Virus record (IMG/VR): IMGVR_UViG_3300032931_001151
Location: 150,201 to 214,200 of that record
Direction: 5' to 3' (one strand)
Length of the DNA: 64,000 bases
In this document: one piece after another, positions 48,639-63,804 of the stretch
How the letters are laid out: each line of letters opens with the position of its first letter
How positions within the stretch are numbered: the first letter of the stretch is position 1
Translations under genes and position numbers: made by a program
The notes under the pieces: generated by a model
What the model was told of the DNA's origin: nothing
Databases searched by the model: none
The model's input: the letters and a program-made list of their open reading frames with translations, nothing else

Positions 48639-49411
48639 CTCCTTACATAAGCTTTTAAATCTTCTTTTGACATTCCAATGATTTTTTTATATTCTTCTTC
48701 GTTTTGTTTAAATCTTGGATTGGTTGTATCGCTATTAAATGTTCTAGAATGGTCTAAATGGAATAATTTACCATCAATCGATCCTATTTTATATCCCAAT
48801 TTTCCAAATCTATCTCTTCTCTCAACATCTTCAGGTCCCCAAGACATAAAGTTTTCATTTTCCATACCTCCTTCTACGTATTTTGATTTATTCATAAATA
48901 AACATCCGCCGGGCGGTGGTGACGGATGTTCAAATGATACTAATGGATCAATTCCTGCTAAATTGAGAGTTAATCCAAATGAATTATGGTATTTACTTGG
49001 AATATTATGATTCGGCTTATTAAAAGGATAGCAAAAATCTAATATATTACCTCTAACAACTTGTGCGGCATTAAGATATTGATGTGGATAAAAAACTACA
49101 TCCGAGTCTTGGCTAACTATTATTGGGGTTTTAGCCCTCTTCGCCATAATATTTAGGTTTTTTGTTTTATGGAATAAGTCGGAGTCGTTTTGTCTATATA
49201 TGTATGTTAATTTTTTATTCCATTCTGCTCTCATTAATTGTGGAAATAGTGCTTGTTTCCCTTCTTCACATATGATGACAGAAGTATCAAAGTGCTTAAA
49301 AAGATACGAGAGAAGTAAATCTATTATTTTCTTTCTATCTTCTGATTCTATTTTAAGAGGTATTAAAAACGTTACGTCACGCAAATTAGACATTATTTTA
49401 TCCATCCCCAA
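48620..49411 (-). CDS. GT2/GT7-C-like glycosyltransferase
   Basis: QDSDV; GGCLF; NENF.SWGPED. Confidence 0.8.
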   Translation of the reverse strand: MGMDKIMSNLRDVTFLIPLKIESEDRKKIIDLLLSYLFKHFDTSVIICEEGKQALFPQLMRAEWNKKLTYIYRQNDSDLFHKTKNLNIMAKRAKTPIIVSQDSDVVFYPHQYLNAAQVVRGNILDFCYPFNKPNHNIPSKYHNSFGLTLNLAGIDPLVSFEHPSPPPGGCLFMNKSKYVEGGMENENFMSWGPEDVERRDRFGKLGYKIGSIDGKLFHLDHSRTFNSDTTNPRFKQNEEEYKKIIGMSKEDLKAYVRSWPWTK

Positions 49412-50151
49412 GTTGCCACTTGTGTTTTCAATGCTTCTCTTGAAAGAGATGATATTCTATGAAATTCCATCTCGTTATCTCTATATGCTTTATGTTCGGT
49501 GTTTGCGCTATTAGGACTTCTCGGATGCGATAGATGATAAAGAGCGCCCTCTATTCTTGAAATTCTATATCCTAATGTTCCAAAACGTTTTAACCTTTCA
49601 TCATCTTCCCAACCCCATGACACAAATCGTTCATTTTCCATTCCACCTTCAATGAACTTTTGCTTATTCCAGAATATAGCACCACCAACGGATTTAGGAT
49701 GAATTAAGTTGCCATTTGATGGTGTTATATTCTCAATCGTTAGATTATTTTGAACATTTGATATGTGTGGTTCAATTAAATCTATAAATCGTCCATCATA
49801 TGGGTAAACCATATCATATTTATTCTCTCTAATAACTCTTACGGCTTGGACATATTGTGCAATTGGGAATAAAACGTCGGTGTCATAGTTAACTATAATT
49901 GGCGTAGTTGATTGTTTGGCTAGAACATTAAGACAATACGTTCTATGCATAAGATAATCACCACGAGGAATGAAAATATGCTTGAATTTTCCAACATCTT
50001 TAAATTTTGATTCCGTGTCATTTTCGCAAATTAATATATTTGTATCAAAATGTTTATTGAGATAATTTATAATAATTCTAATATTTCGTAATCTTTCGGG
50101 GGTGTCTAATTTGAAGGGGATATTAAATGTCACGTCGGTTAAATTTATCAT
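49393..50151 (-). CDS. GT2/GT7-C-like glycosyltransferase, paralog of the adjacent gene
   Basis: YDTDV; GGAIF; NERFVSWGWED. Confidence 0.8.
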   Translation of the reverse strand: MINLTDVTFNIPFKLDTPERLRNIRIIINYLNKHFDTNILICENDTESKFKDVGKFKHIFIPRGDYLMHRTYCLNVLAKQSTTPIIVNYDTDVLFPIAQYVQAVRVIRENKYDMVYPYDGRFIDLIEPHISNVQNNLTIENITPSNGNLIHPKSVGGAIFWNKQKFIEGGMENERFVSWGWEDDERLKRFGTLGYRISRIEGALYHLSHPRSPNSANTEHKAYRDNEMEFHRISSLSREALKTQVATWGWIK

Positions 50152-50774
50152 ATTTCTTTTATTAAACCTTTATCTAAATAGTGGTTATATAATACCGTTT
50201 CTGCTTGTTGTGGATGATAATTAAAACAATCGCTTTTATCTAAATATTTTTCCCAATAATACTTGTATGGGTATTTTCTAGCCGGATCAAATCCTGTCAC
50301 GAATATTTCAGCATCTTTGAATCTATATAAACATGATTCTATAGTAGTCATTCCTGAGTCTGGGTAATACCATTCCATGTTATTTTTTAAATTCTCGCTT
50401 ATTGTCTTCATTTTATTGTATAAATTGTCGTAAATGTAAGGATCTACAAATATAAATTCTAATGGTTTAAATCTACCAAAATGTTCTCTAGCCCTAACTC
50501 TATTATTATGATGTCCTTTTGCAAATTTGTCTGGTATCCAAACTTCATTGCATAGTTTGAAATTTTCTATTAATCTATGACTCCCTAATAATCCCGCCGT
50601 AGCCCCTTCTCCCGTTATCATCATAGAAATAATATCTACTTTTTTACCAACATAACTTTCCCACCCTTCAATGAGAAAATTATTCATCCTAATAACCCTA
50701 TCACAAGAATCAATGAAATCTCCATTTTTAACCATGGAAGCCTTATATCCATTTGCAACAATCGCTATTCTCAT
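50148..50774 (-). CDS. GT29 (sialyltransferase-like) protein
   Basis: IAIVANG...NGDFIDSCDRVIRMN (sialylmotif L-like); PDSG...I...L......VTGFD (motif S-like). Confidence 0.65.
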   Translation of the reverse strand: MRIAIVANGYKASMVKNGDFIDSCDRVIRMNNFLIEGWESYVGKKVDIISMMITGEGATAGLLGSHRLIENFKLCNEVWIPDKFAKGHHNNRVRAREHFGRFKPLEFIFVDPYIYDNLYNKMKTISENLKNNMEWYYPDSGMTTIESCLYRFKDAEIFVTGFDPARKYPYKYYWEKYLDKSDCFNYHPQQAETVLYNHYLDKGLIKEI

Positions 50775-51589
50775 TTATGATTTCTCCAAAATTCAGAAGC
50801 CTCTTGGATTTGTTGATTAATATTTTGTTTAACTACTCCGCTATCTCTTTGGCATACTTTTACTTTCCATTTAGCATATTCTTCGTCATTTTCCGGTGGG
50901 TGGATGATGGGTATAGAATCTGACATTTGCCAAGTAAATCCTTTCTGTCCCAAATCCATAAGGAAATAAGCATCATCACCGGCGTATACGCCCATAACCC
51001 TATATCCGCCAATCGTTTCCCATGCCCTTCTTGACATAAATAGGCATCCGCCCGCAATTCCACTCGGTTGATTAGGCCATACAACTTTTTCGTTGAATGT
51101 TTTGCCATTAAATGTTATAGAATAATCATTTACATTTTCATAACAAGTTTTATAATGACATCCGTGTCCGTTTTGTTGTAATCCTATTAACCCAAATGGT
51201 TTGCCTTTTATAGTCTCTGTCTTATTAGCCATAGCAATAAGACGATTGAAGAATTCTTCATTATCTTGGGGGAATAGTATATCCGAATCGGCTGACATAA
51301 TATACTTGTGGTGAGACTTTAAGAACTTTTTCGTTAAAGTGTTTACTACTACGGCTTTACCTACATTATCATTAAATGATAATATGTCTTTTTTTCCAAA
51401 TTGGTCTTTAATGGTTGATAAAATTGGTGCCCACTGTTGTTTATCTTTGCACCATCCGCCGAAGCAAACGTCAACATTCTCTACTTTGTGTTCTTTTAAG
51501 TATTTGCCCAAAGATATTAGAGAATTTATGTTTCTTTCTGTAACTCTAGTTATTGGTCCAAATATTGGCTGACAAAGTAAAATTGACAT
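50771..51589 (-). CDS. GT2-like glycosyltransferase
   Basis: NVGKA; ADSDI; AGGCLF; YAGDDA. Confidence 0.7.
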   Translation of the reverse strand: MSILLCQPIFGPITRVTERNINSLISLGKYLKEHKVENVDVCFGGWCKDKQQWAPILSTIKDQFGKKDILSFNDNVGKAVVVNTLTKKFLKSHHKYIMSADSDILFPQDNEEFFNRLIAMANKTETIKGKPFGLIGLQQNGHGCHYKTCYENVNDYSITFNGKTFNEKVVWPNQPSGIAGGCLFMSRRAWETIGGYRVMGVYAGDDAYFLMDLGQKGFTWQMSDSIPIIHPPENDEEYAKWKVKVCQRDSGVVKQNINQQIQEASEFWRNHK

Positions 51590-57868: not shown

Positions 57869-57922
57869 GATTCGGACACATCCGATAACTCTTAAACCTA
57901 GGGCCAAAACCCTAGGTTTTTT
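57859..57922 (+). promoter_or_regulatory. Mutually exclusive antiterminator/terminator
   Basis: CCTAGGTTAAGA(57859-70) pairs with TCTTAAACCTAGG(57890-902); AAACCTAGGG(57894-903)-ccaaaa-CCCTAGGTTT plus U-tract. Confidence 0.8.
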
Positions 57923-57979: not shown

Positions 57980-58070
57980 GGAGTAGACAATAGGAAAAGT
58001 TCCTAGAGAGTTTGCTAAACTCATCGTGCCTTTTATTAGGCATTCAGTGCGAATCTGAGCTACTCCACCA
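57980..58070 (+). tRNA. tRNA-Ser(GCT), atypical D-arm
   Basis: GGAGTAG/CTACTCC acceptor; loop TT-GCT-AA; long variable arm; CCA. Confidence 0.8.
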
Positions 58071-58072
58071 AT

Positions 58073-58150
58073 GGGCAAAAGTCTAGCTGGTATGCTAGTA
58101 AACGTCTGATAAGCGTTTTTAGGTGAGTTCGATTCTCACTTTGCCCACCA
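58073..58150 (+). tRNA. tRNA-Ile(GAT)
   Basis: GGGCAAA/TTTGCCC; CT-GAT-AA; TTCGATT; CCA. Confidence 0.85.
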
Positions 58151-58218
58151 TTCCCTTTAATAGAGTTGGAGTTGAAACTATTTTAGCTGAGGTTAAGCTA
58201 ATTAAAACCTCAAGTCAT

Positions 58219-58294
58219 CAGGCCGTAGTGTTTAACAGTAGCATGGCTCGTTTGGGGCGAGGTGGAGGGAGTGCAAATCTCCCCGGCTTGACCA
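58219..58294 (+). tRNA. tRNA-Pro(TGG)
   Basis: CAGGCCG/CGGCTTG; TT-TGG-GG; CCA. Confidence 0.85.
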
Positions 58295-58309
58295 TTTTTA
58301 GTAATTCAT

Positions 58310-58383
58310 ACCGATGTAGCATAAGTAGCAAATGCGAAAGATTGTCGATCTTTAGATAGTGGGTGCAAGTCCCATCATCGGTG
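58310..58383 (+). tRNA. tRNA-Asp(GTC), CCA not encoded
   Basis: ACCGATG/CATCGGT; AAAGA-TTGTCGA-TCTTT. Confidence 0.85.
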
Positions 58384-58444
58384 CTTTTATTAACAATAGA
58401 ATTAATATATGATATAATGTACTTTCACTATTAGAAAGGATTAT

Positions 58445-58714
58445 ATGAAAGATTCAAAATATGGCATATTTCAAGAATATATAAGATGCTATAGAGATAT
58501 ACTCATTTATATAAAAAAGTATGAACATGATAGCGATGAAATCACTAAGGATAGATTTGAAAGTAAAAGGTTAAAATTAATAGATATGGAAGAAAACGAA
58601 TCGTTTATTGTTAATATTCTATCTATATTAGAAATGCCTAGCACACAAGATATTTGTATTACGAGTAGTTTCCCAAGTAATATTTTGAAATGCACTACAT
58701 ATAATAAAAATTAA
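58445..58714 (+). CDS. Hypothetical protein in the tRNA array
   Basis: AAAGGA SD. Confidence 0.55.
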   Translation: MKDSKYGIFQEYIRCYRDILIYIKKYEHDSDEITKDRFESKRLKLIDMEENESFIVNILSILEMPSTQDICITSSFPSNILKCTTYNKN

Positions 58715-58730
58715 TTTATATAGAATTTAT

Positions 58731-58805
58731 GCCGGGGTCGTATATGAGGTAATACGCAAGTCTGAAGAACTTGATCAACGGATTCGAGCGCCGTCCCCGG
58801 CACCA
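58731..58805 (+). tRNA. tRNA-Phe(GAA)
   Basis: GCCGGGG/CCCCGGC; CT-GAA-GA; CCA. Confidence 0.85.
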
Positions 58806-58850
58806 TTTACATAGGGTTACAACTCCCATAGTTAAAAGTTGAAACTTTGT

Positions 58851-58927
58851 GGGTTGCAAGCATAAATGGAAGGATGCCATCGATTCTTAATCGATAGAGT
58901 AGGGTTCGAATCCCTAGCGACCCACCA
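58851..58927 (+). tRNA. tRNA-Lys(CTT)
   Basis: GGGTTGC/GCGACCC; TT-CTT-AA; TTCGAAT; CCA. Confidence 0.9.
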
Positions 58928-58930
58928 CAT

Positions 58931-59019
58931 GGATTAGGCAATTGCAGGAGATGCAACATTGTTTGGAAAACAATTGGGGCCTTTACGGGCCTTTGGAGCG
59001 TAACCAAGCTAATCCGCCA
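58931..59019 (+). tRNA. tRNA-Ser(GGA), atypical D- and T-arms
   Basis: GGATTAG/CTAATCC; ATTGT-TTGGAAA-ACAAT; long variable arm; G73; CCA. Confidence 0.75.
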
Positions 59020-59024
59020 TTTTT

Positions 59025-59114
59025 GGAAATACGGGAACATAGTTGTTCAAATAGTTTCGAAAACTATCCTTGGTCTTAATTGGCCTAACCGTGCGATTCG
59101 GTGTATTTCCTCCA
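59025..59114 (+). tRNA. tRNA-Ser(CGA), 8/4 acceptor/T-stem fold
   Basis: GGAAATAC/GTATTTCC 8 bp; ACCG/CGGT T-stem; TT-CGA-AA; CCA. Confidence 0.75.
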
Positions 59115-59148
59115 ACTTCGTGATATAATAAATAGTACGAGAGGCAAT

Positions 59149-59937
59149 ATGAATATAACAATTGATCACGATAACGATGGTTTTGGCGCACAAATGATGG
59201 GTATTATATCTGCTATAGCATATGCAAAATTTCATGAACATACTTATTATCACACACCAAGAAAAAATATAAAATTGGTTGGGATAGAAGAACCTCAGAA
59301 TGCGGAGATTGATAAAATTAATGAGTTTTTAAACACATTTATGAAAAATTTGGGAATAAATTTAATGCCATCTGAAATTTTACTTGACGGAGAGGGTAAA
59401 CCAAAATTTACATGTGAAGTTAGGCCACATTTTCATGACGAAATATATTACAACGGATCAAACTATTATACGAAAGAATTTAATACATATCTAAGACAAA
59501 ATTATCCACTTACTAAACCTAACTATTATGAAAATATGCATAATATAGCAATTCACATTAGAAGGGGATCTGATATAGATTCACCATCGCAACGGCATAA
59601 TAGATGGATTGATTCAAACGTTTATAATTGTCTTATAGACTTAATACACGTAAAATATCCAAATAGTATTATACATGTATTTTCTTGGGGTGATCCAGAA
59701 ATAGAGATAAAACCGTTCATAGTATTTCATTCATCAAATAGTGGTTCAACATTTTTAGATGACTATAATGCATTAGTTTGGGCCGACATATTGGTAGTGG
59801 GGTCAAGTACTTTTAGTCTTTCTGCCGCTCTTATAAACAATAATAAAATAATAATTGATGGGGCATTTTATAAATTAAATGGTATGTACATACCAAATGA
59901 ATGGATGCAAAATTTTAAAGAATTTTATGTAATGTGA
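59149..59937 (+). CDS. GT11-like (alpha-1,2-fucosyl/colitosyl-transferase-like) glycosyltransferase
   Basis: DGFGAQ; IAIHIRRGSD; ADIL..G.STFS; true start after the tRNA-Ser(CGA). Confidence 0.75.
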   Translation: MNITIDHDNDGFGAQMMGIISAIAYAKFHEHTYYHTPRKNIKLVGIEEPQNAEIDKINEFLNTFMKNLGINLMPSEILLDGEGKPKFTCEVRPHFHDEIYYNGSNYYTKEFNTYLRQNYPLTKPNYYENMHNIAIHIRRGSDIDSPSQRHNRWIDSNVYNCLIDLIHVKYPNSIIHVFSWGDPEIEIKPFIVFHSSNSGSTFLDDYNALVWADILVVGSSTFSLSAALINNNKIIIDGAFYKLNGMYIPNEWMQNFKEFYVM

Positions 59938-59986
59938 AATATTATAGAATAAAGAATTATTCTAAAGATTATGAAAAAATTAAAAT

Positions 59987-60078
59987 GGATCGGTGAGTGA
60001 GCGGTCAAAACTAGAAATTTACTAAATTTCCGATCCCAGAAATGGGGTCCGTAGGTTCGAATCCTACCCGATCCGCCA
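59987..60078 (+). tRNA. tRNA-Ser(ACT)
   Basis: GGATCGG/CCGATCC; GAAAT-TTACTAA-ATTTC; long variable arm; G73; CCA. Confidence 0.85.
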
Positions 60079-60081
60079 TAT

Positions 60082-60174
60082 GGAGAGAACAACCGAGAAT
60101 AGTTTTCGGCACTGATTTGAAATCAGAGGGTTCCGTGCAAACGGGATAAGGTGCGATACCTTGGCTCTCCACCA
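60082..60174 (+). tRNA. tRNA-Ser(TGA), extended D-stem
   Basis: GGAGAG/CTCTCC; CTGA-TTTGAAA-TCAG; long variable arm; CCA. Confidence 0.75.
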
Positions 60175-60176
60175 TC

Positions 60177-60204
60177 TTGACAATATATTAAAATATGCTA
60201 TAAT
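60177..60204 (+). promoter_or_regulatory. Sigma70 promoter with extended -10 directly upstream of the suppressor tRNA
   Basis: TTGACA-16 nt-TATAAT with TG extension. Confidence 0.75.
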
Positions 60205-60214
60205 GAACTCACAT

Positions 60215-60286
60215 GGGTCATTGACCGAGTGGCACAGGTGATGGGTTCTAAACCCATTTAGAAGTGTTCAAATCACTTATGACTCA
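60215..60286 (+). tRNA. Amber suppressor tRNA (anticodon CTA)
   Basis: GGGTCAT/ATGACTC; ATGGG-TT-CTA-AA-CCCAT; AAGTG-TTCAAAT-CACTT; A73; followed by CAA, not CCA. Confidence 0.8.
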
Positions 60287-60319
60287 CAATTATAAATAAA
60301 CACTAGCAAAGGAGCTAAT

Positions 60320-60430: not shown

Positions 60431-60855
60431 ATAAAAAAGAATTGATTGCTAAGATTAAAGAAGAAATTAAAGTCACTTCCGAGATCCTTAGAATAAATAA
60501 AAAGACTCACAAACAAAACCAAAGAATGTATTCACAAGGCACAAGACCTTTTGAGTTAATTCAACTTTATCCGTTTGATGTGGAAAAGGTAACACCTTTT
60601 AATCATAATTATGTAAAAGTAATTGATGGAAAACATTATTGGAACTATAGTTACAACGAAACTCCATGCAATGCGGGCATTGAGTCGGCAAAGTGCCACT
60701 TGACTTGTCTACATATTGTGTATAATATGCTTCGTACAAAAAAGACGCATTGCCACAACATTGAAAGGAATGATTATTATGTTAAATATTTTGATAAGCT
60801 CATACAAGGATATCTTAGCCAAGTGGAAGAGGAACAAAATGTTGTCGTATCCTGA
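60427..60855 (+). CDS. Hypothetical protein preceding the PTH2-like gene
   Basis: AAGGA SD; LHIVYNMLR motif. Confidence 0.65.
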   Translation: MNKKELIAKIKEEIKVTSEILRINKKTHKQNQRMYSQGTRPFELIQLYPFDVEKVTPFNHNYVKVIDGKHYWNYSYNETPCNAGIESAKCHLTCLHIVYNMLRTKKTHCHNIERNDYYVKYFDKLIQGYLSQVEEEQNVVVS

Positions 60856-61210
60856 ACCACCATCTTTAGAAGAAGCACTAAAACAAGTTAGAATGTATGT
60901 TTTAGTAAGAAGGGAAATTTTACCTTTAGTCCATTGTGTTTGTCAATGTACACATGCGGTAGCCGAATTTATTCATTATCATCAAAATGATAATACTAAA
61001 TTATGGGTTACATGTGAAAAAACTTTAATTGTTTTAGAAGCGACGGAAGACCAAATAAAAGAAAAAATGATTTGGTTTGCTGACCGTCATATGAATTATC
61101 AACCTTTTTGTGAACCGGATATGAATAATGTTCTAACGGCGGTTGCGTTTCAACCAATTACAAAACAAATTGGTAATGAAGTTTTTGGTAACTTAAAGCT
61201 TCTAAAATAA
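60839..61210 (+). CDS. Peptidyl-tRNA hydrolase, PTH2-like phage family
   Basis: YVLVRR; Q..HAVAEF; W.....LIVL; F.EPDM...LTAVA. Confidence 0.7.
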   Translation: MLSYPEPPSLEEALKQVRMYVLVRREILPLVHCVCQCTHAVAEFIHYHQNDNTKLWVTCEKTLIVLEATEDQIKEKMIWFADRHMNYQPFCEPDMNNVLTAVAFQPITKQIGNEVFGNLKLLK

Positions 61211-61223
61211 TATTTAAAAATGA

Positions 61224-61262
61224 CCCGTCCAAGTATAAATAAGTTTATAACACTTGGACGGG
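61224..61262 (+). promoter_or_regulatory. 11-bp hairpin enclosing a late promoter and sequestering the SD of the endonuclease gene
   Basis: CCCGTCCAAGT...ACTTGGACGGG; TATAAATA 61234-61241; ATG 61271. Confidence 0.8.
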
Positions 61263-61270
61263 ACACTATT

Positions 61271-61897
61271 ATGAATGAAAATGTACTTAGAAAAGATAAA
61301 CAAAAATTACATCTTATTAAAAAATTAAGATGTATTATGGATCATGGCGGAAAATGTAAACATTGTGGAAAGGATTTAATAATAAACCACTACGATGCAG
61401 ATTTTCATCATATAGACCCTTCGATTAAAGAAGTTGTGGGGCATTCTTTAATGAATGGGCATTATTACAAAATAAAAAAAGAAGTTGATAAGTGTATTTT
61501 ATTATGTGGATCGTGTCATAGGTATGAACATTGTAAATGGAAAGATTGGATTAATCACAAAGAAGAATTACTTTCTTTAGCAAAAAATATTCATAATAGG
61601 AGAACCATAGAAGATACACAACAACGTATTAAAAAAATTAAAGAATTATATTTAAGCGGTAATGGTATAAGACAAATAGCAAAAATATTAGGAATACCTG
61701 TATCCTCTGTTGGATATACAATTAAGAAATTGGGTATAGGTAGACCATTTATTACTAAAGTGTCTAATGAAGAATTGATAGAATGTTTTAAGCAAGGAAT
61801 GACAGCAAGTGAGGTTTCAAAAAAATATAATTGTTGTTATGCAAACTGTTGTAGAAAACATAAAAAATGGAGAAATAAAAAAAGTAAGCTGCTATAG
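61271..61897 (+). CDS. HNH-type homing endonuclease with C-terminal HTH domains
   Basis: CKHCG; DFHHID; CILLCGSCHRYEH; GIRQIAKILG. Confidence 0.8.
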   Translation: MNENVLRKDKQKLHLIKKLRCIMDHGGKCKHCGKDLIINHYDADFHHIDPSIKEVVGHSLMNGHYYKIKKEVDKCILLCGSCHRYEHCKWKDWINHKEELLSLAKNIHNRRTIEDTQQRIKKIKELYLSGNGIRQIAKILGIPVSSVGYTIKKLGIGRPFITKVSNEELIECFKQGMTASEVSKKYNCCYANCCRKHKKWRNKKSKLL

Positions 61898-62193: not shown

Positions 62194-62267
62194 ACCCGGT
62201 TCATCTAATGGAAGGATATAAAACTACGAATTTTATCATTTAGGTTCGAATCCTAAGCCGGGTGCCA
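62194..62267 (+). tRNA. tRNA-Arg(ACG)
   Basis: ACCCGGT/GCCGGGT; CT-ACG-AA; CCA. Confidence 0.9.
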
Positions 62268-62270
62268 TTT

Positions 62271-62393
62271 CTCTAGATGCATTAAAGGATTACACCAAAC
62301 AGTGGATTGTAGGTTCAACTCCTACCAAGTGAAAGCTTGTAGCTTAATTGGCAAAGCAACCGTCAAAAACATCTTTTAAACTTTTTGCTAGAG
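62271..62393 (+). ncRNA. Circularly permuted tRNA-like RNA (T-arm, loop-closed acceptor stem, D-arm); Y-RNA/YrlA-like architecture
   Basis: GTAGG-TTCAACT-CCTAC; CAAGT-GAAA-GCTTG; TA-GCTT-AATTGGCA-AAGC. Confidence 0.65.
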
Positions 62394-62405
62394 AATCTTT
62401 TTCAT

Positions 62406-62499: not shown

Positions 62500-62636
62500 G
62501 TTGTCGTGTAGCTCAGTGGTTAGAGCGAATTTTTGAGGAAACGAGAAATTGTTTCTAGGTCGCAAATAGTGACCGTTCAAAATTGTGCGGGTAAAAATGT
62601 CTTTAGTGACATGGTTCGATTCCCCCTACGACAACA
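62500..62636 (+). ncRNA. tRNA-like RNA with a branched insert replacing the anticodon loop
   Basis: GTTGTCGT/ACGACAAC; canonical D-arm GCTCAGTGGTTAGAGC; TTCGATT T-loop; no 7-nt anticodon loop. Confidence 0.6.
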
Positions 62637-62646
62637 TCTTTTTCAA

Positions 62647-62732
62647 GCGTCTATGGAGAAATAGAAGACTCGTGAGACTAAGAATCTCATTCCGTAAATG
62701 GAGTACAAGTGCAAGTCTTGTTAGGCGCACCA
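62647..62732 (+). tRNA. tRNA-Leu(AAG)
   Basis: GCGTCTA/TAGGCGC; TGAGA-CTAAGAA-TCTCA; CCA. Confidence 0.85.
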
Positions 62733-62747
62733 TTTTGTAAAATCCAC

Positions 62748-62835
62748 GGGGGCGTGGTGAAATAGAAAACACACAACGCTTAAAACGTTGCGGATAGAAA
62801 TATCCTTGCAGGTGCAAGTCCTGTCGCCCCTACCA
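62748..62835 (+). tRNA. tRNA-Leu(TAA)
   Basis: GGGGGCG/CGCCCCT; CT-TAA-AA; CCA. Confidence 0.9.
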
Positions 62836-62840
62836 ATTAC

Positions 62841-62914
62841 GCCGATTTAGTATAGTGACATTACAATTGATTCGTATCCAATAAACGATGGTTTAATTCC
62901 ATCAATCGGCACCA
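62841..62914 (+). tRNA. tRNA-Thr(CGT)
   Basis: GCCGATT/AATCGGC; TT-CGT-AT; T-loop TTTAATT; CCA. Confidence 0.75.
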
Positions 62915-63718: not shown

Positions 63719-63804
63719 GCGGAGTGAAGTCCAATGGCCGGACATCAGATTGTGGCTCTGAGTGCGAAAGCACATTGCGGGTTCGAATCCCGTCACTTCG
63801 CCCA
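63719..63804 (+). tRNA. tRNA-His(GTG) with long variable arm
   Basis: G-1:C73; TCAGA-TTGTGGC-TCTGA; GTGC-GAAA-GCAC extra arm; CCA. Confidence 0.85.

What the first reader, a model, noticed from the sequence alone, without database searches (positions are those of the whole stretch)
57980..60174. Five tRNA-Ser genes, four with non-canonical Sec-like D-arms and one with an 8/4 fold
Seen: Ser(GCT), (GGA), (CGA) and (TGA) lack U8 and have long D-stems with tiny loops (TAGGAA/TTCCTA, TTGCA/TGCAA, GAACA/TGTTC, CCGAGAA/TTTTCGG). Their discriminators vary (A, G, U, A) and their T-loops are odd (TGCGAAT, AGCGTAA, TGCGATT, TGCGATA). Ser(CGA) folds with an 8-bp acceptor and 4-bp T-stem. Established: 8/4 tRNA-Ser occur in some bacteria and phages, and SerRS recognises the long variable arm. 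Inference: remodelled bodies may stay chargeable while evading host tRNA nucleases.
Basis: partly seen in the sequence, partly recalled or inferred. Interest (0 to 1): 0.7.

Follow-up and report, generated by a model that had tools for sequence, protein, structure and literature searches.

The report
Compact serine tRNAs in a jumbo phage
A 214-kb phage carries five serine tRNA genes, four of which have a shortened, selenocysteine-tRNA-like shape and a rewired "elbow" that standard tRNA finders miss, yet comparison with related phages shows that their fold is conserved.

Summary
Window 57980-60174 holds five tRNA-Ser genes. One is canonical, Ser(ACU). Four are non-canonical: GCU, GGA, CGA and UGA. 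ARAGORN and the Rfam tRNA and Sec models miss all four, even at E<=10. All four sit 2-5 nt from canonical tRNAs in a phage tRNA array. They encode CCA, start GGA and end UCC, have a long variable arm, lack U8, and have a 5-7 bp D-stem with a 3-5 nt loop.

Orthologues in six related metagenomic phage contigs keep every helix through compensatory changes. For Ser(CGA), 97% of cells are paired, 20 of 28 pairs changed on both sides, and 0 of 500 shuffles did as well.

Ser(CGA) is a true 8/4 tRNA, and its 8th acceptor pair covaries (C-G/U-A). The other three have 7 bp (UGA: 6 bp plus a 7:66 mismatch), then a non-Watson-Crick 8:65 layer, then a 4-bp T-stem.

The "odd" T-loops are not decay. G55 always comes with A18 in the D-loop, and U55 with G18. 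The 19:56 pair covaries as G-C, U-A and C-G.

These are most likely working tRNA-Ser isoacceptors of the known phage (8/4) allo-tRNA-Ser kind, with a new elbow variant. Charging, expression and nuclease evasion remain untested.

The parts
57980..58070 (+). tRNA-Ser(GCU), compact type. It has a 7-bp acceptor, A8 opposite G65, linker CAA, a 6-bp D-stem with loop AAG, a 6-bp V-stem, a 4-bp T-stem, T-loop UGCGAAU, A73 and an encoded CCA.
   Evidence: Fold. CM R1 scores 99.9 bits. There are 4 orthologues, and the RNAalifold consensus has 15 pairs changed on both sides. ARAGORN and Rfam do not find it.
58931..59019 (+). tRNA-Ser(GGA), compact type. It has a 7-bp acceptor, G8 opposite G65, linker CAA, a 5-bp D-stem with loop GGAGA, T-loop AGCGUAA (an A54/U58 swap plus G55), G73 and CCA.
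   Evidence: Against the L141 orthologue there are 2 compensatory D-stem pairs, 2 compensatory T-stem pairs, and the linked change A18/G55 to G18/U55.
59025..59114 (+). tRNA-Ser(CGA), a true 8/4 tRNA. It has an 8-bp acceptor, linker GG, a 5-bp D-stem with tetraloop UAGU, a 4-bp T-stem, T-loop UGCGAUU, U73 and CCA.
   Evidence: Over 7 orthologues 97.4% of cells are paired and 20 of 28 pairs changed on both sides. The 8th acceptor pair is C-G in 4 and U-A in 3.
59987..60078 (+). tRNA-Ser(ACU), a canonical class II 7/5 tRNA with a GG D-loop, UUCGAAU T-loop, G73 and CCA. It has an unusual A34.
   Evidence: ARAGORN. Rfam tRNA 47.9 bits. A canonical Ser(ACU) is also found in L141, L144, L145, L146, L148 and L152.
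60082..60174 (+). tRNA-Ser(UGA), compact type. It has a 6-bp acceptor followed by tandem A.G mismatches at 7:66 and 8:65, linker CAA, a 7-bp D-stem with loop UAG, a 4-bp T-stem, T-loop UGCGAUA, A73 and CCA.
   Evidence: There are 3 compact orthologues, and 14 pairs changed on both sides. More distant relatives (L144, L145, L148) carry a canonical 7/5 Ser(UGA) instead.
58073..58927 (+). Canonical tRNAs packed between the Ser genes: Ile, Pro, Asp, Phe and Lys. Spacers to the Ser genes are 2-5 nt, so the genes form polycistronic tRNA clusters.
   Evidence: Pro and Asp also carry the A18/G55 elbow.
57894..57919 (+). Terminator-like hairpin that closes the upstream unit, just before the tRNA array begins.

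Best explanation
The four odd genes are working serine tRNA isoacceptors of a compact, tRNA-Sec-like / allo-tRNA-like design that is inherited within a clade of T4-related jumbo phages.

They are probably transcribed with their canonical neighbours as polycistronic precursors and trimmed by host RNase P and 3' processing; the CCA end is already encoded. They are then probably serylated by the host SerRS, which reads the long variable arm and the GGA/UCC end of the acceptor stem rather than the anticodon. Together with the canonical Ser(ACU) they decode all six Ser codons of the phage.

Their acceptor/T coaxial stack still has 12 layers. In Ser(CGA) this is 8 Watson-Crick pairs plus 4. In GCU and GGA it is 7 pairs, one non-Watson-Crick 8:65 layer, then 4. 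In UGA it is 6 pairs, two non-Watson-Crick layers (7:66 and 8:65), then 4.

The short D hairpin still docks on the T-loop. G19 pairs with C56, and position 18 contacts position 55. In the window's sub-lineage the 18:55 contact has switched from the tRNA-type G18/U55 to A18/G55. That gives a UGNRA-type T-loop with an adenosine partner, as seen in riboswitch T-loops.

Shown here: the sequence features, conservation, secondary covariation and tertiary covariation. Inferred: transcription, processing, serylation and use on the ribosome.
For: (1) All four fold as cloverleaves with a long V-arm and encoded CCA.

(2) They lie 2-5 nt from canonical tRNAs, in stretches where no protein gene was called.

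(3) Their anticodons are GCU, GGA, CGA and UGA. Each anticodon loop is kept in its orthologues. All six Ser codons are used and make up 7.6% of codons.

(4) Orthologues occur in L141, L152, L138, L144, L145 and L148.

(5) Secondary covariation is strong. For CGA, 97.4% of cells are paired, 20 of 28 pairs changed on both sides, 0 of 500 shuffles did as well, and slid controls pair only 33-45%. RNAalifold predicts the 8/4 fold by itself. The GCU, GGA and UGA groups are 93-100% paired; GCU and UGA have compensatory changes in every helix including the D hairpin, and the two GGA orthologues in the D- and T-stems.

(6) Tertiary covariation is consistent. D-loop [18,19] against T-loop [55,56] is GG/UC, AG/GC, GU/UA or GC/UG in all 18 compact Ser genes.

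(7) Among 164 ARAGORN-detected tRNAs of the clade, 127 are UC with GG, 25 are GC with AG and no GG, 5 are UU with GA, and 2 are UA with GU.

(8) UGNRA T-loops that take an intercalating adenosine are the common non-tRNA solution (bioRxiv 10.1101/2022.12.26.521914).

(9) SerRS accepts 8/4, 9/3 and Sec-type bodies, and (8/4) tRNA-Ser occur in phage tRNA clusters (PMC5389517).
Against: There is no expression or aminoacylation evidence. No sequencing run was listed for this DNA, and the host is unknown.

Two of the four (GCU, UGA) have A73. That is not the G73/U73 seen in most allo-tRNAs. From memory, A73 is also a leucine identity element in bacteria.

The L138 orthologue of Ser(UGA) has two acceptor mismatches, so some copies may be decaying.

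The anticodon stems of GCU and UGA open with an A.A mismatch.

For GCU, GGA and UGA the choice between 7 + non-WC + 4 and 7/5 with a U.G wobble cannot be settled from sequence. The record holds no SerRS-type core (PF00587 not found), so charging must rely on an unknown host enzyme.
Confidence: 0.75

Rival explanations
1. The remodelled bodies (compact D-arm, no U8, 8/4-type junction, A18/G55 elbow) are an adaptation. They would let phage tRNA-Ser escape a host tRNA nuclease, or another host factor that reads the canonical D-arm or elbow, while SerRS still charges them.
For: The G18/U55 to A18/G55 switch appears in different tRNA families and different sub-lineages. In the window it is in all four compact Ser genes, each with a different T-stem. 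In L141 only two of the four have it. That pattern looks like repeated selection rather than one inherited change.

The genome also carries an Rnl1-type RNA ligase, a CCA-adding-type enzyme and a Pth2-like hydrolase, which are typical of phages investing in tRNA upkeep.
Against: No nuclease, target or host is known here. The compact design predates the elbow switch and is shared across the clade, so it may simply be inherited. Many other tRNAs in the same array keep canonical bodies. Parallel change could also reflect relaxed constraint plus a neutral isosteric swap.
Confidence: 0.2
2. They are decaying pseudo-tRNAs or non-translational tRNA-like RNAs (decoys, or processing or regulatory elements), and only Ser(ACU) is a real tRNA.
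For: ARAGORN and Rfam do not call them. They have unusual discriminators, T-loops without U55 and non-Watson-Crick layers in the acceptor branch. One orthologue (L138 UGA) has acceptor mismatches. Mukai et al. found some allo-tRNAs inactive in E. coli.
Against: Every helix is maintained by compensatory changes, and the elbow contacts covary. Anticodon loops are kept unchanged. The four anticodons form a complete, non-redundant Ser set. Without them the phage would supply only AGU decoding. Orthologues with a canonical T-loop are called as tRNA-Ser by ARAGORN.
Confidence: 0.07
3. GCU, GGA and UGA are ordinary 7/5 tRNAs with a U49.G65 wobble closing a 5-bp T-stem. Only the D-arm and T-loop are unusual.
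For: In the window, L141 and L152 the 7/5 parse scores slightly higher than the 8/4-like parse (for example 44.1 against 42.1). A U.G pair is possible in all three isoacceptors of that sub-lineage.
Against: The same positions are U.C or C.C in L144, L145, L148 and L138. RNAalifold gives a 4-bp T-stem plus unpaired 3' nucleotides for the GCU (one nt) and UGA (two nt) groups. U49 is also the closing partner of the V-stem. Even as 7/5 they have a 4-nt linker and no U8.
Confidence: 0.3

Closest known systems
(8/4) tRNA-Ser / (8/4) allo-tRNA of phages and bacteria (Mukai et al. 2017, NAR, PMC5389517)
   Same: Ser(CGA) shares the 8-bp acceptor with a 4-bp T-stem, the long V-arm, a Sec-like long D-stem with a tetraloop, a serine anticodon and U73. 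Like the published cases, it sits in a phage tRNA gene cluster.
   Different: Three of the four genes have a non-Watson-Crick 8th layer instead of a true 8th pair. The anticodon stems are 5 bp, not longer. Two genes have A73. The T-loops carry G55 with A18, which that paper's main text does not mention. The His tRNA in the same array is 7/5 with G-1:C73 and a long V-arm, not the (8/4) tRNA-His reported alongside phage (8/4) tRNA-Ser.
Bacterial tRNA-Sec (selC; Rfam RF01852)
   Same: Long D-stem with a very small loop, long V-arm, an acceptor that starts GGA, and presumed charging by SerRS.
   Different: The acceptor branch has 12 layers, not 13 (8/5). The anticodons are serine sense anticodons, not UCA. 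There is no Rfam Sec hit.
Canonical bacterial class II tRNA-Ser (Rfam RF00005), such as Ser(ACU) at 59987-60078
   Same: Long V-arm, a GGA...UCC acceptor end, serine anticodons and an encoded CCA like the neighbouring tRNAs.
   Different: No U8. The acceptor-to-D linker is 3-4 nt (2 nt in CGA). The D-arm is 5-7 bp with a 3-5 nt loop, instead of 3-4 bp with an 8-11 nt loop. The T-stem is 4 bp, and the elbow is G55/A18.
UGNRA T-loops with an intercalating adenosine in riboswitches and rRNA (bioRxiv 10.1101/2022.12.26.521914)
   Same: The T-loop pentamer U-G-N-R-A is paired with an adenosine from the partner loop. This matches UGCGA/UGCAA with the 'AG' D-loops seen here.
   Different: Here the motif sits in the tRNA elbow, where U55 and G18 are otherwise nearly universal. 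The contact geometry here is inferred from covariation only.

Membership tests
(8/4) tRNA-Ser / allo-tRNA (Mukai 2017) | 12-bp acceptor branch split 8/4 (or 9/3) | tested here: met
   Met for Ser(CGA). The 8-bp acceptor and 4-bp T-stem are 100% paired in 7 orthologues, and the 8th pair is C-G or U-A. For GCU, GGA and UGA the 8th layer is A.G, G.G or A.C, never Watson-Crick, so the feature is met only in a loose sense for those three.
(8/4) tRNA-Ser / allo-tRNA (Mukai 2017) | Long variable arm | tested here: met
   All four have 4-7 bp V-stems, kept with covariation.
(8/4) tRNA-Ser / allo-tRNA (Mukai 2017) | Sec-like D-arm: long stem with a tetraloop | tested here: met
   D-stems are 5-7 bp and loops 3-5 nt, with compensatory changes in the stem.
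(8/4) tRNA-Ser / allo-tRNA (Mukai 2017) | Anticodon stem longer than in canonical tRNAs | tested here: not met
   The stems are 5 bp. In GCU and UGA the outermost pair is A.A.
(8/4) tRNA-Ser / allo-tRNA (Mukai 2017) | Discriminator G73 or U73 | tested here: inconclusive
   GGA has G73 and CGA has U73, but GCU and UGA have A73. Orthologues vary between G, A and U.
(8/4) tRNA-Ser / allo-tRNA (Mukai 2017) | Serylated by SerRS and used in translation | not testable with these tools
   No RNA data were listed and the host is unknown.
tRNA-Sec (RF01852) | UCA anticodon, a 13-bp acceptor branch and a match to the Sec covariance model | tested here: not met
   The anticodons are GCU, GGA, CGA and UGA. 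The branch has 12 layers. There is no RF01852 hit at E<=10.
Canonical tRNA (RF00005) | 7/5 branch, U8, G18G19 with U55C56, and a match to the tRNA covariance model | tested here: not met
   There is no RF00005 hit at E<=10 and no ARAGORN call for any of the four. Position 8 is A, G, C or A. The D-loops lack GG, apart from two non-elbow Gs opening the 5-nt GGA loop, and G55 replaces U55.

The most novel reading that the evidence does not exclude
A clade of jumbo phages has rebuilt two parts of the tRNA body under selection. One is the core of its serine tRNAs: a compact D hairpin, no U8 and an 8/4-type junction. The other is the elbow of many of its tRNAs, which has switched from G18/U55 to A18/G55, a riboswitch-style UGNRA T-loop. 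If adaptive, this would yield natural tRNAs that still work with SerRS, EF-Tu and the ribosome, but are no longer substrates for a host factor that reads the canonical elbow or D-arm. Such factors could be a tRNase, or TruB/TrmH-type marking that feeds a defence. The same tRNAs also go unseen by annotation software.
Probability: 0.2. Interest if true: 0.85.

Novelty: new variant of a known kind. Interest (0 to 1): 0.62.

Why it matters
First, standard annotation (ARAGORN, Rfam tRNA and Sec models) misses four of the five serine tRNAs. The phage would therefore be scored as lacking any UCN decoder. tRNA counts for huge phages may be underestimates in the same way.

Second, the relatives form a natural series, from canonical to compact bodies and from G18/U55 to A18/G55 elbows. 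In that series nature has already made the compensatory "double mutants". I found no paper describing an A18/G55 tRNA elbow, so the near-universal G18-psi55 contact appears to have a working alternative. That bears on RNase P, CCA-adding enzyme, TruB, TrmH and ribosome recognition of the elbow, and on the design of orthogonal tRNAs.

Third, if the remodelling is adaptive, it points to an unknown host pressure on the tRNA body rather than on the anticodon loop.

Tried and rejected
- Near and distant DNA searches of the GenBank phage set found no relative. Only short chance or tRNA-level hits came back.
- The search for related loci in IMG/VR with the glycosyltransferase-like and Pth2-like proteins found nothing.
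It returned tmRNA-like and unrelated GC-rich sequences and no family member.
- Two sequencing-run look-ups listed no run, so expression could not be examined.
- A phage-encoded SerRS was sought and not found: PF00587 is absent from a record estimated 90% complete.
- A TadA-like deaminase that might explain the A34 tRNAs was sought. The only deaminase-fold ORF looks like a dCMP/ComEB type.
- The IMG/VR label 'provirus' gave no host clue. The 3.3 kb trimmed from the original contig holds only small ORFs without bacterial hallmarks.
- The model-fitted alignments A2 and A3, and the MAFFT alignment A5 of mixed isoacceptors, were out of register in the D-arm and at the 8/4 junction. I did not use them for pair counts. 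I used per-isoacceptor alignments and an explicit structural parse instead.
- Alternative genetic codes were considered because of the CUA tRNA. Table 11 already gives dense long ORFs, so I did not adopt one.
Full report
**Context**

The window is the last 64 kb of a 214.2-kb single-contig IMG/VR virus record with 32.8% GC, which reads densely under table 11. It encodes:
- a T4-type large terminase, about 31% identical to the gp17 homologues of cultured phages
- a class II ribonucleotide reductase
- a Pth2-like hydrolase and an HNH/HTH homing endonuclease inside the tRNA array
- an Rnl1-type RNA ligase and a CCA-adding-type nucleotidyltransferase elsewhere in the genome

It is therefore a jumbo myovirus. 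The 'provirus' label gave no host information. ARAGORN finds 18 tRNAs, all between 58073 and 63885.

**Checking the observation**

| Gene | Window coordinates | Position 8 | Acceptor-to-D linker | D-stem / loop | T-loop | Discriminator |
|---|---|---|---|---|---|---|
| Ser(GCU) | 57980-58070 | A | CAA | 6 bp / AAG | UGCGAAU | A |
| Ser(GGA) | 58931-59019 | G | CAA | 5 bp / GGAGA | AGCGUAA | G |
| Ser(CGA) | 59025-59114 | C (paired) | GG | 5 bp / UAGU | UGCGAUU | U |
| Ser(UGA) | 60082-60174 | A | CAA | 7 bp / UAG | UGCGAUA | A |

- All four fold as cloverleaves with a long variable arm. They begin GGA, end UCC-N-CCA and lack U8.
- The fifth gene, Ser(ACU) at 59987-60078, is a canonical class II tRNA.
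- ARAGORN does not report the four. The Rfam tRNA and tRNA-Sec models give no hit on them even at E<=10, although they hit 17 neighbours.
- The four lie 2-5 nt from canonical tRNAs (GCU-Ile, Lys-GGA, GGA-CGA, ACU-UGA). The source's own gene calls place no protein gene over them.

**Relatives**

Cultured-phage databases hold no near relative. Protein searches with two array-flanking genes led to metagenomic contigs that carry the same array:
- L137 is a near-identical strain.
- L141 has a 76% identical flanking protein.
- L138, L144, L145, L146, L147 and L148 are more distant.
- A DNA pattern taken from the CGA gene added L152.

A covariance model built from the four window genes found orthologues in these contigs. 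It also found an 8/4 Ser(GGA), with a 7-bp D-stem and a tetraloop, in a 306-kb phage whose terminase is only 43% identical.

**Secondary structure is under selection**

For the seven Ser(CGA) orthologues:
- The 8/4 cloverleaf has 97.4% of cells paired, and 20 of 28 pairs changed on both sides.
- None of 500 shuffles reached this, and sliding the partner columns drops pairing to 33-45%.
- The 8th acceptor pair is C-G in four sequences and U-A in three.
- RNAalifold predicts the same 8/4 fold without being told.

For the other three isoacceptors:
- A structural parse gives 97.8% paired cells for GCU, 100% for GGA and 93.0% for UGA. GCU and UGA show compensatory changes in every helix, including the short D hairpin. 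The two GGA orthologues show them in the D- and T-stems.
- RNAalifold gives 15 doubly changed pairs for GCU and 14 for UGA. For GCU its consensus is a 7-bp acceptor, a 4-nt linker, a 6-bp D-stem, a 4-bp T-stem and one unpaired nucleotide before the 3' acceptor strand. For UGA it is a 6-bp acceptor and a 4-bp T-stem with two unpaired nucleotides between them.
- Positions 8 and 65 are A.G, G.G or A.C and never Watson-Crick. Ser(UGA) has a tandem purine-purine pair at 7:66 and 8:65.
- I therefore read these three as 8/4-like, with a non-Watson-Crick 8th layer that keeps a 12-layer acceptor/T stack.
- In the window's sub-lineage a 7/5 fold closed by U49.G65 is also possible and scores slightly higher. 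The same positions are U.C or C.C in the more distant relatives. This point is not settled.

**The odd T-loops are explained**

Across the 18 compact Ser genes, the two central D-loop bases and T-loop positions 55-56 always match:
- GG with UC
- AG with GC (all four window genes, plus the L141 GCU and CGA genes and the L152 CGA gene)
- GU with UA (L152 UGA)
- GC with UG (L138 UGA)

So the 19:56 tertiary Watson-Crick pair covaries as G-C, U-A and C-G. The 18:55 contact switches between G/U and A/G.

Between the window and L141, the only D-loop change in Ser(GGA) is GGAGA to GGGGA, and it coincides with G55 to U55. The same holds for Ser(UGA).

The rule extends to the canonical tRNAs of the clade. 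Of 164 ARAGORN calls:
- 127 have U55C56 with a GG D-loop.
- 25 have G55C56 with an AG D-loop and no GG. These include Pro, Asp, several Leu, Lys, Arg, Phe and His.
- 5 have U55U56 with GA.
- 2 have U55A56 with GU.

Sister-lineage orthologues differ: the window's Pro, Asp, Leu(AAG) and Leu(UAA) are AG/G55, while those of L141 are GG/U55. The switch has therefore happened repeatedly.

A preprint on T-loops reports that UGNRA is the dominant T-loop in riboswitches. It also reports that the partner loop almost always donates an adenosine, and that tRNA is the exception in having U at position 2. The A18/G55 elbow thus looks like that general solution transplanted into tRNA. A full-text search found no paper describing an A18/G55 tRNA elbow. 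That is absence in the searched library, not proof of novelty.

**Function**

- Anticodon loops are kept within each orthologue group.
- The phage uses all six Ser codons, 7.6% of codons in total: UCU 18.8, UCA 19.3, AGU 17.9, UCG 8.3, UCC 6.7 and AGC 5.3 per thousand.
- GGA, UGA, CGA, GCU and ACU together decode all of them.
- No class II synthetase core is present in the record, so charging must fall to the host SerRS.
- Published work shows SerRS accepts 8/4, 9/3 and Sec-type bodies, and that (8/4) tRNA-Ser occur in phage tRNA clusters.
- The discriminator varies among orthologues (G, A, U). This suggests it is weakly constrained here, but the A73 of GCU and UGA is a real uncertainty.
- Expression could not be checked.

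**Evolution**

All sampled members with the relevant region carry an 8/4 Ser(CGA) and a compact Ser(GCU). Compact Ser(UGA) is limited to the window, L141, L152 and L138. L144, L145 and L148 have a canonical 7/5 Ser(UGA) instead. Where the T-loop is canonical, ARAGORN calls several of the compact orthologues, and it also calls the L152 CGA gene despite its G55. In the window the compact D-arm together with G55 probably explains why all four genes go undetected.

**Comparison and verdict**

Ser(CGA) is a member of the published phage (8/4) tRNA-Ser kind. The other three are variants of it. Their differences are a non-Watson-Crick 8th layer, A73 in two of them, a 5-bp anticodon stem and the A18/G55 elbow.

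The nuclease-evasion idea remains an untested inference. It is compatible with the repeated elbow switches and with the phage's tRNA-maintenance genes, but neutral isosteric drift is equally compatible.

Noticed in passing
window 58219-58294 (Pro), 58310-58384 (Asp), 62647-62732 (Leu AAG), 62748-62835 (Leu UAA); also L137, L138, L144-L147: Otherwise canonical tRNAs carry the same elbow variant: T-loop UGCRA (G55) with an 'AG' D-loop in place of GG. All 25 G55 tRNAs in the clade lack GG. The L141 orthologues of Pro, Asp and Leu have GG/U55.
   Followed up: yes
window 62841-62914 (Thr CGU); L137 11702-11787 (Cys); L141 14216-14310, 15456-15529, 15596-15673: The 19:56 elbow pair is not G-C in several tRNAs. 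It is A19-U56 (D-loop GA with T-loop UUU) or U19-A56 (GU with UUA), and is always complementary.
   Followed up: partly
window 63720-63804; L137 11370-11458 and 11702-11787: tRNA-His(GUG) is 85 nt, with G-1:C73 and a 4-bp variable-arm hairpin (GAAA loop). In the near-identical strain, tRNA-Asn (89 nt) and tRNA-Cys (86 nt) also have long variable arms. These are class II-like bodies on tRNAs that are normally class I. The long His is found in L141 and L144-L148 as well.
   Followed up: partly
window 60215-60287, promoter-like site 60177-60204: An amber-suppressor-type tRNA (anticodon CUA) lies behind a perfect TTGACA-16-TATAAT site, and is also present in L141, L138, L145, L148 and L152. TAG ends only 11 of 181 crude long ORFs. 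Table 11 still gives dense ORFs.
   Followed up: partly
window 59987-60078, 62647-62732, 62194-62267; L144, L145, L147: There are many A34 tRNAs: Ser(ACU), Leu(AAG) and Arg(ACG) here, and Thr(AGU), His(AUG), Tyr(AUA) and Ser(AGA) in relatives. No TadA-like deaminase was found. The one deaminase-fold ORF looks like a dCMP/ComEB type.
   Followed up: partly
window 62270-62397: A Y RNA-like (YrlA, RF02553) match at 35.4 bits, E 5e-5, below the gathering score of 69. It lies between Arg(ACG) and Leu(UAG) and includes a tRNA-like T-arm.
   Followed up: no
window 62502-62634: A 133-nt stretch with tRNA-like acceptor, D-arm and T-loop (weak RF00005 hit, 24 bits), interrupted by about 60 nt in the anticodon/variable region. 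It could be an intron-containing or disrupted tRNA.
   Followed up: no
window 60839-61210; G000:C1:60192-60824; G000:C1:24369-24773: The phage encodes a Pth2-type peptidyl-tRNA hydrolase inside the array, and a Pth2-type gene also lies beside the arrays of L141, L138, L144, L145 and L148. It also encodes an Rnl1-type RNA ligase and a CCA-adding/poly(A) polymerase-family enzyme.
   Followed up: partly
window 61220-61897; L137 3498-4320: An HNH/HTH homing-endonuclease-like gene sits inside the tRNA array. In the near-identical strain the same region is called as three short ORFs, so it may be disrupted there.
   Followed up: no
window 59149-59937: A 262-aa glycosyltransferase-family-11-like ORF lies between Ser(CGA) and Ser(ACU). 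Its homologues in other contigs (L139, L140) lie in large sugar-modification gene clusters. The phage has several other glycosyltransferases upstream (window 49393-51589).
   Followed up: no
L147 4356-4724; L148 13038-13397: Two related phage contigs encode a tmRNA (tag peptide DDSVEYAMAA) next to their tRNA arrays.
   Followed up: no
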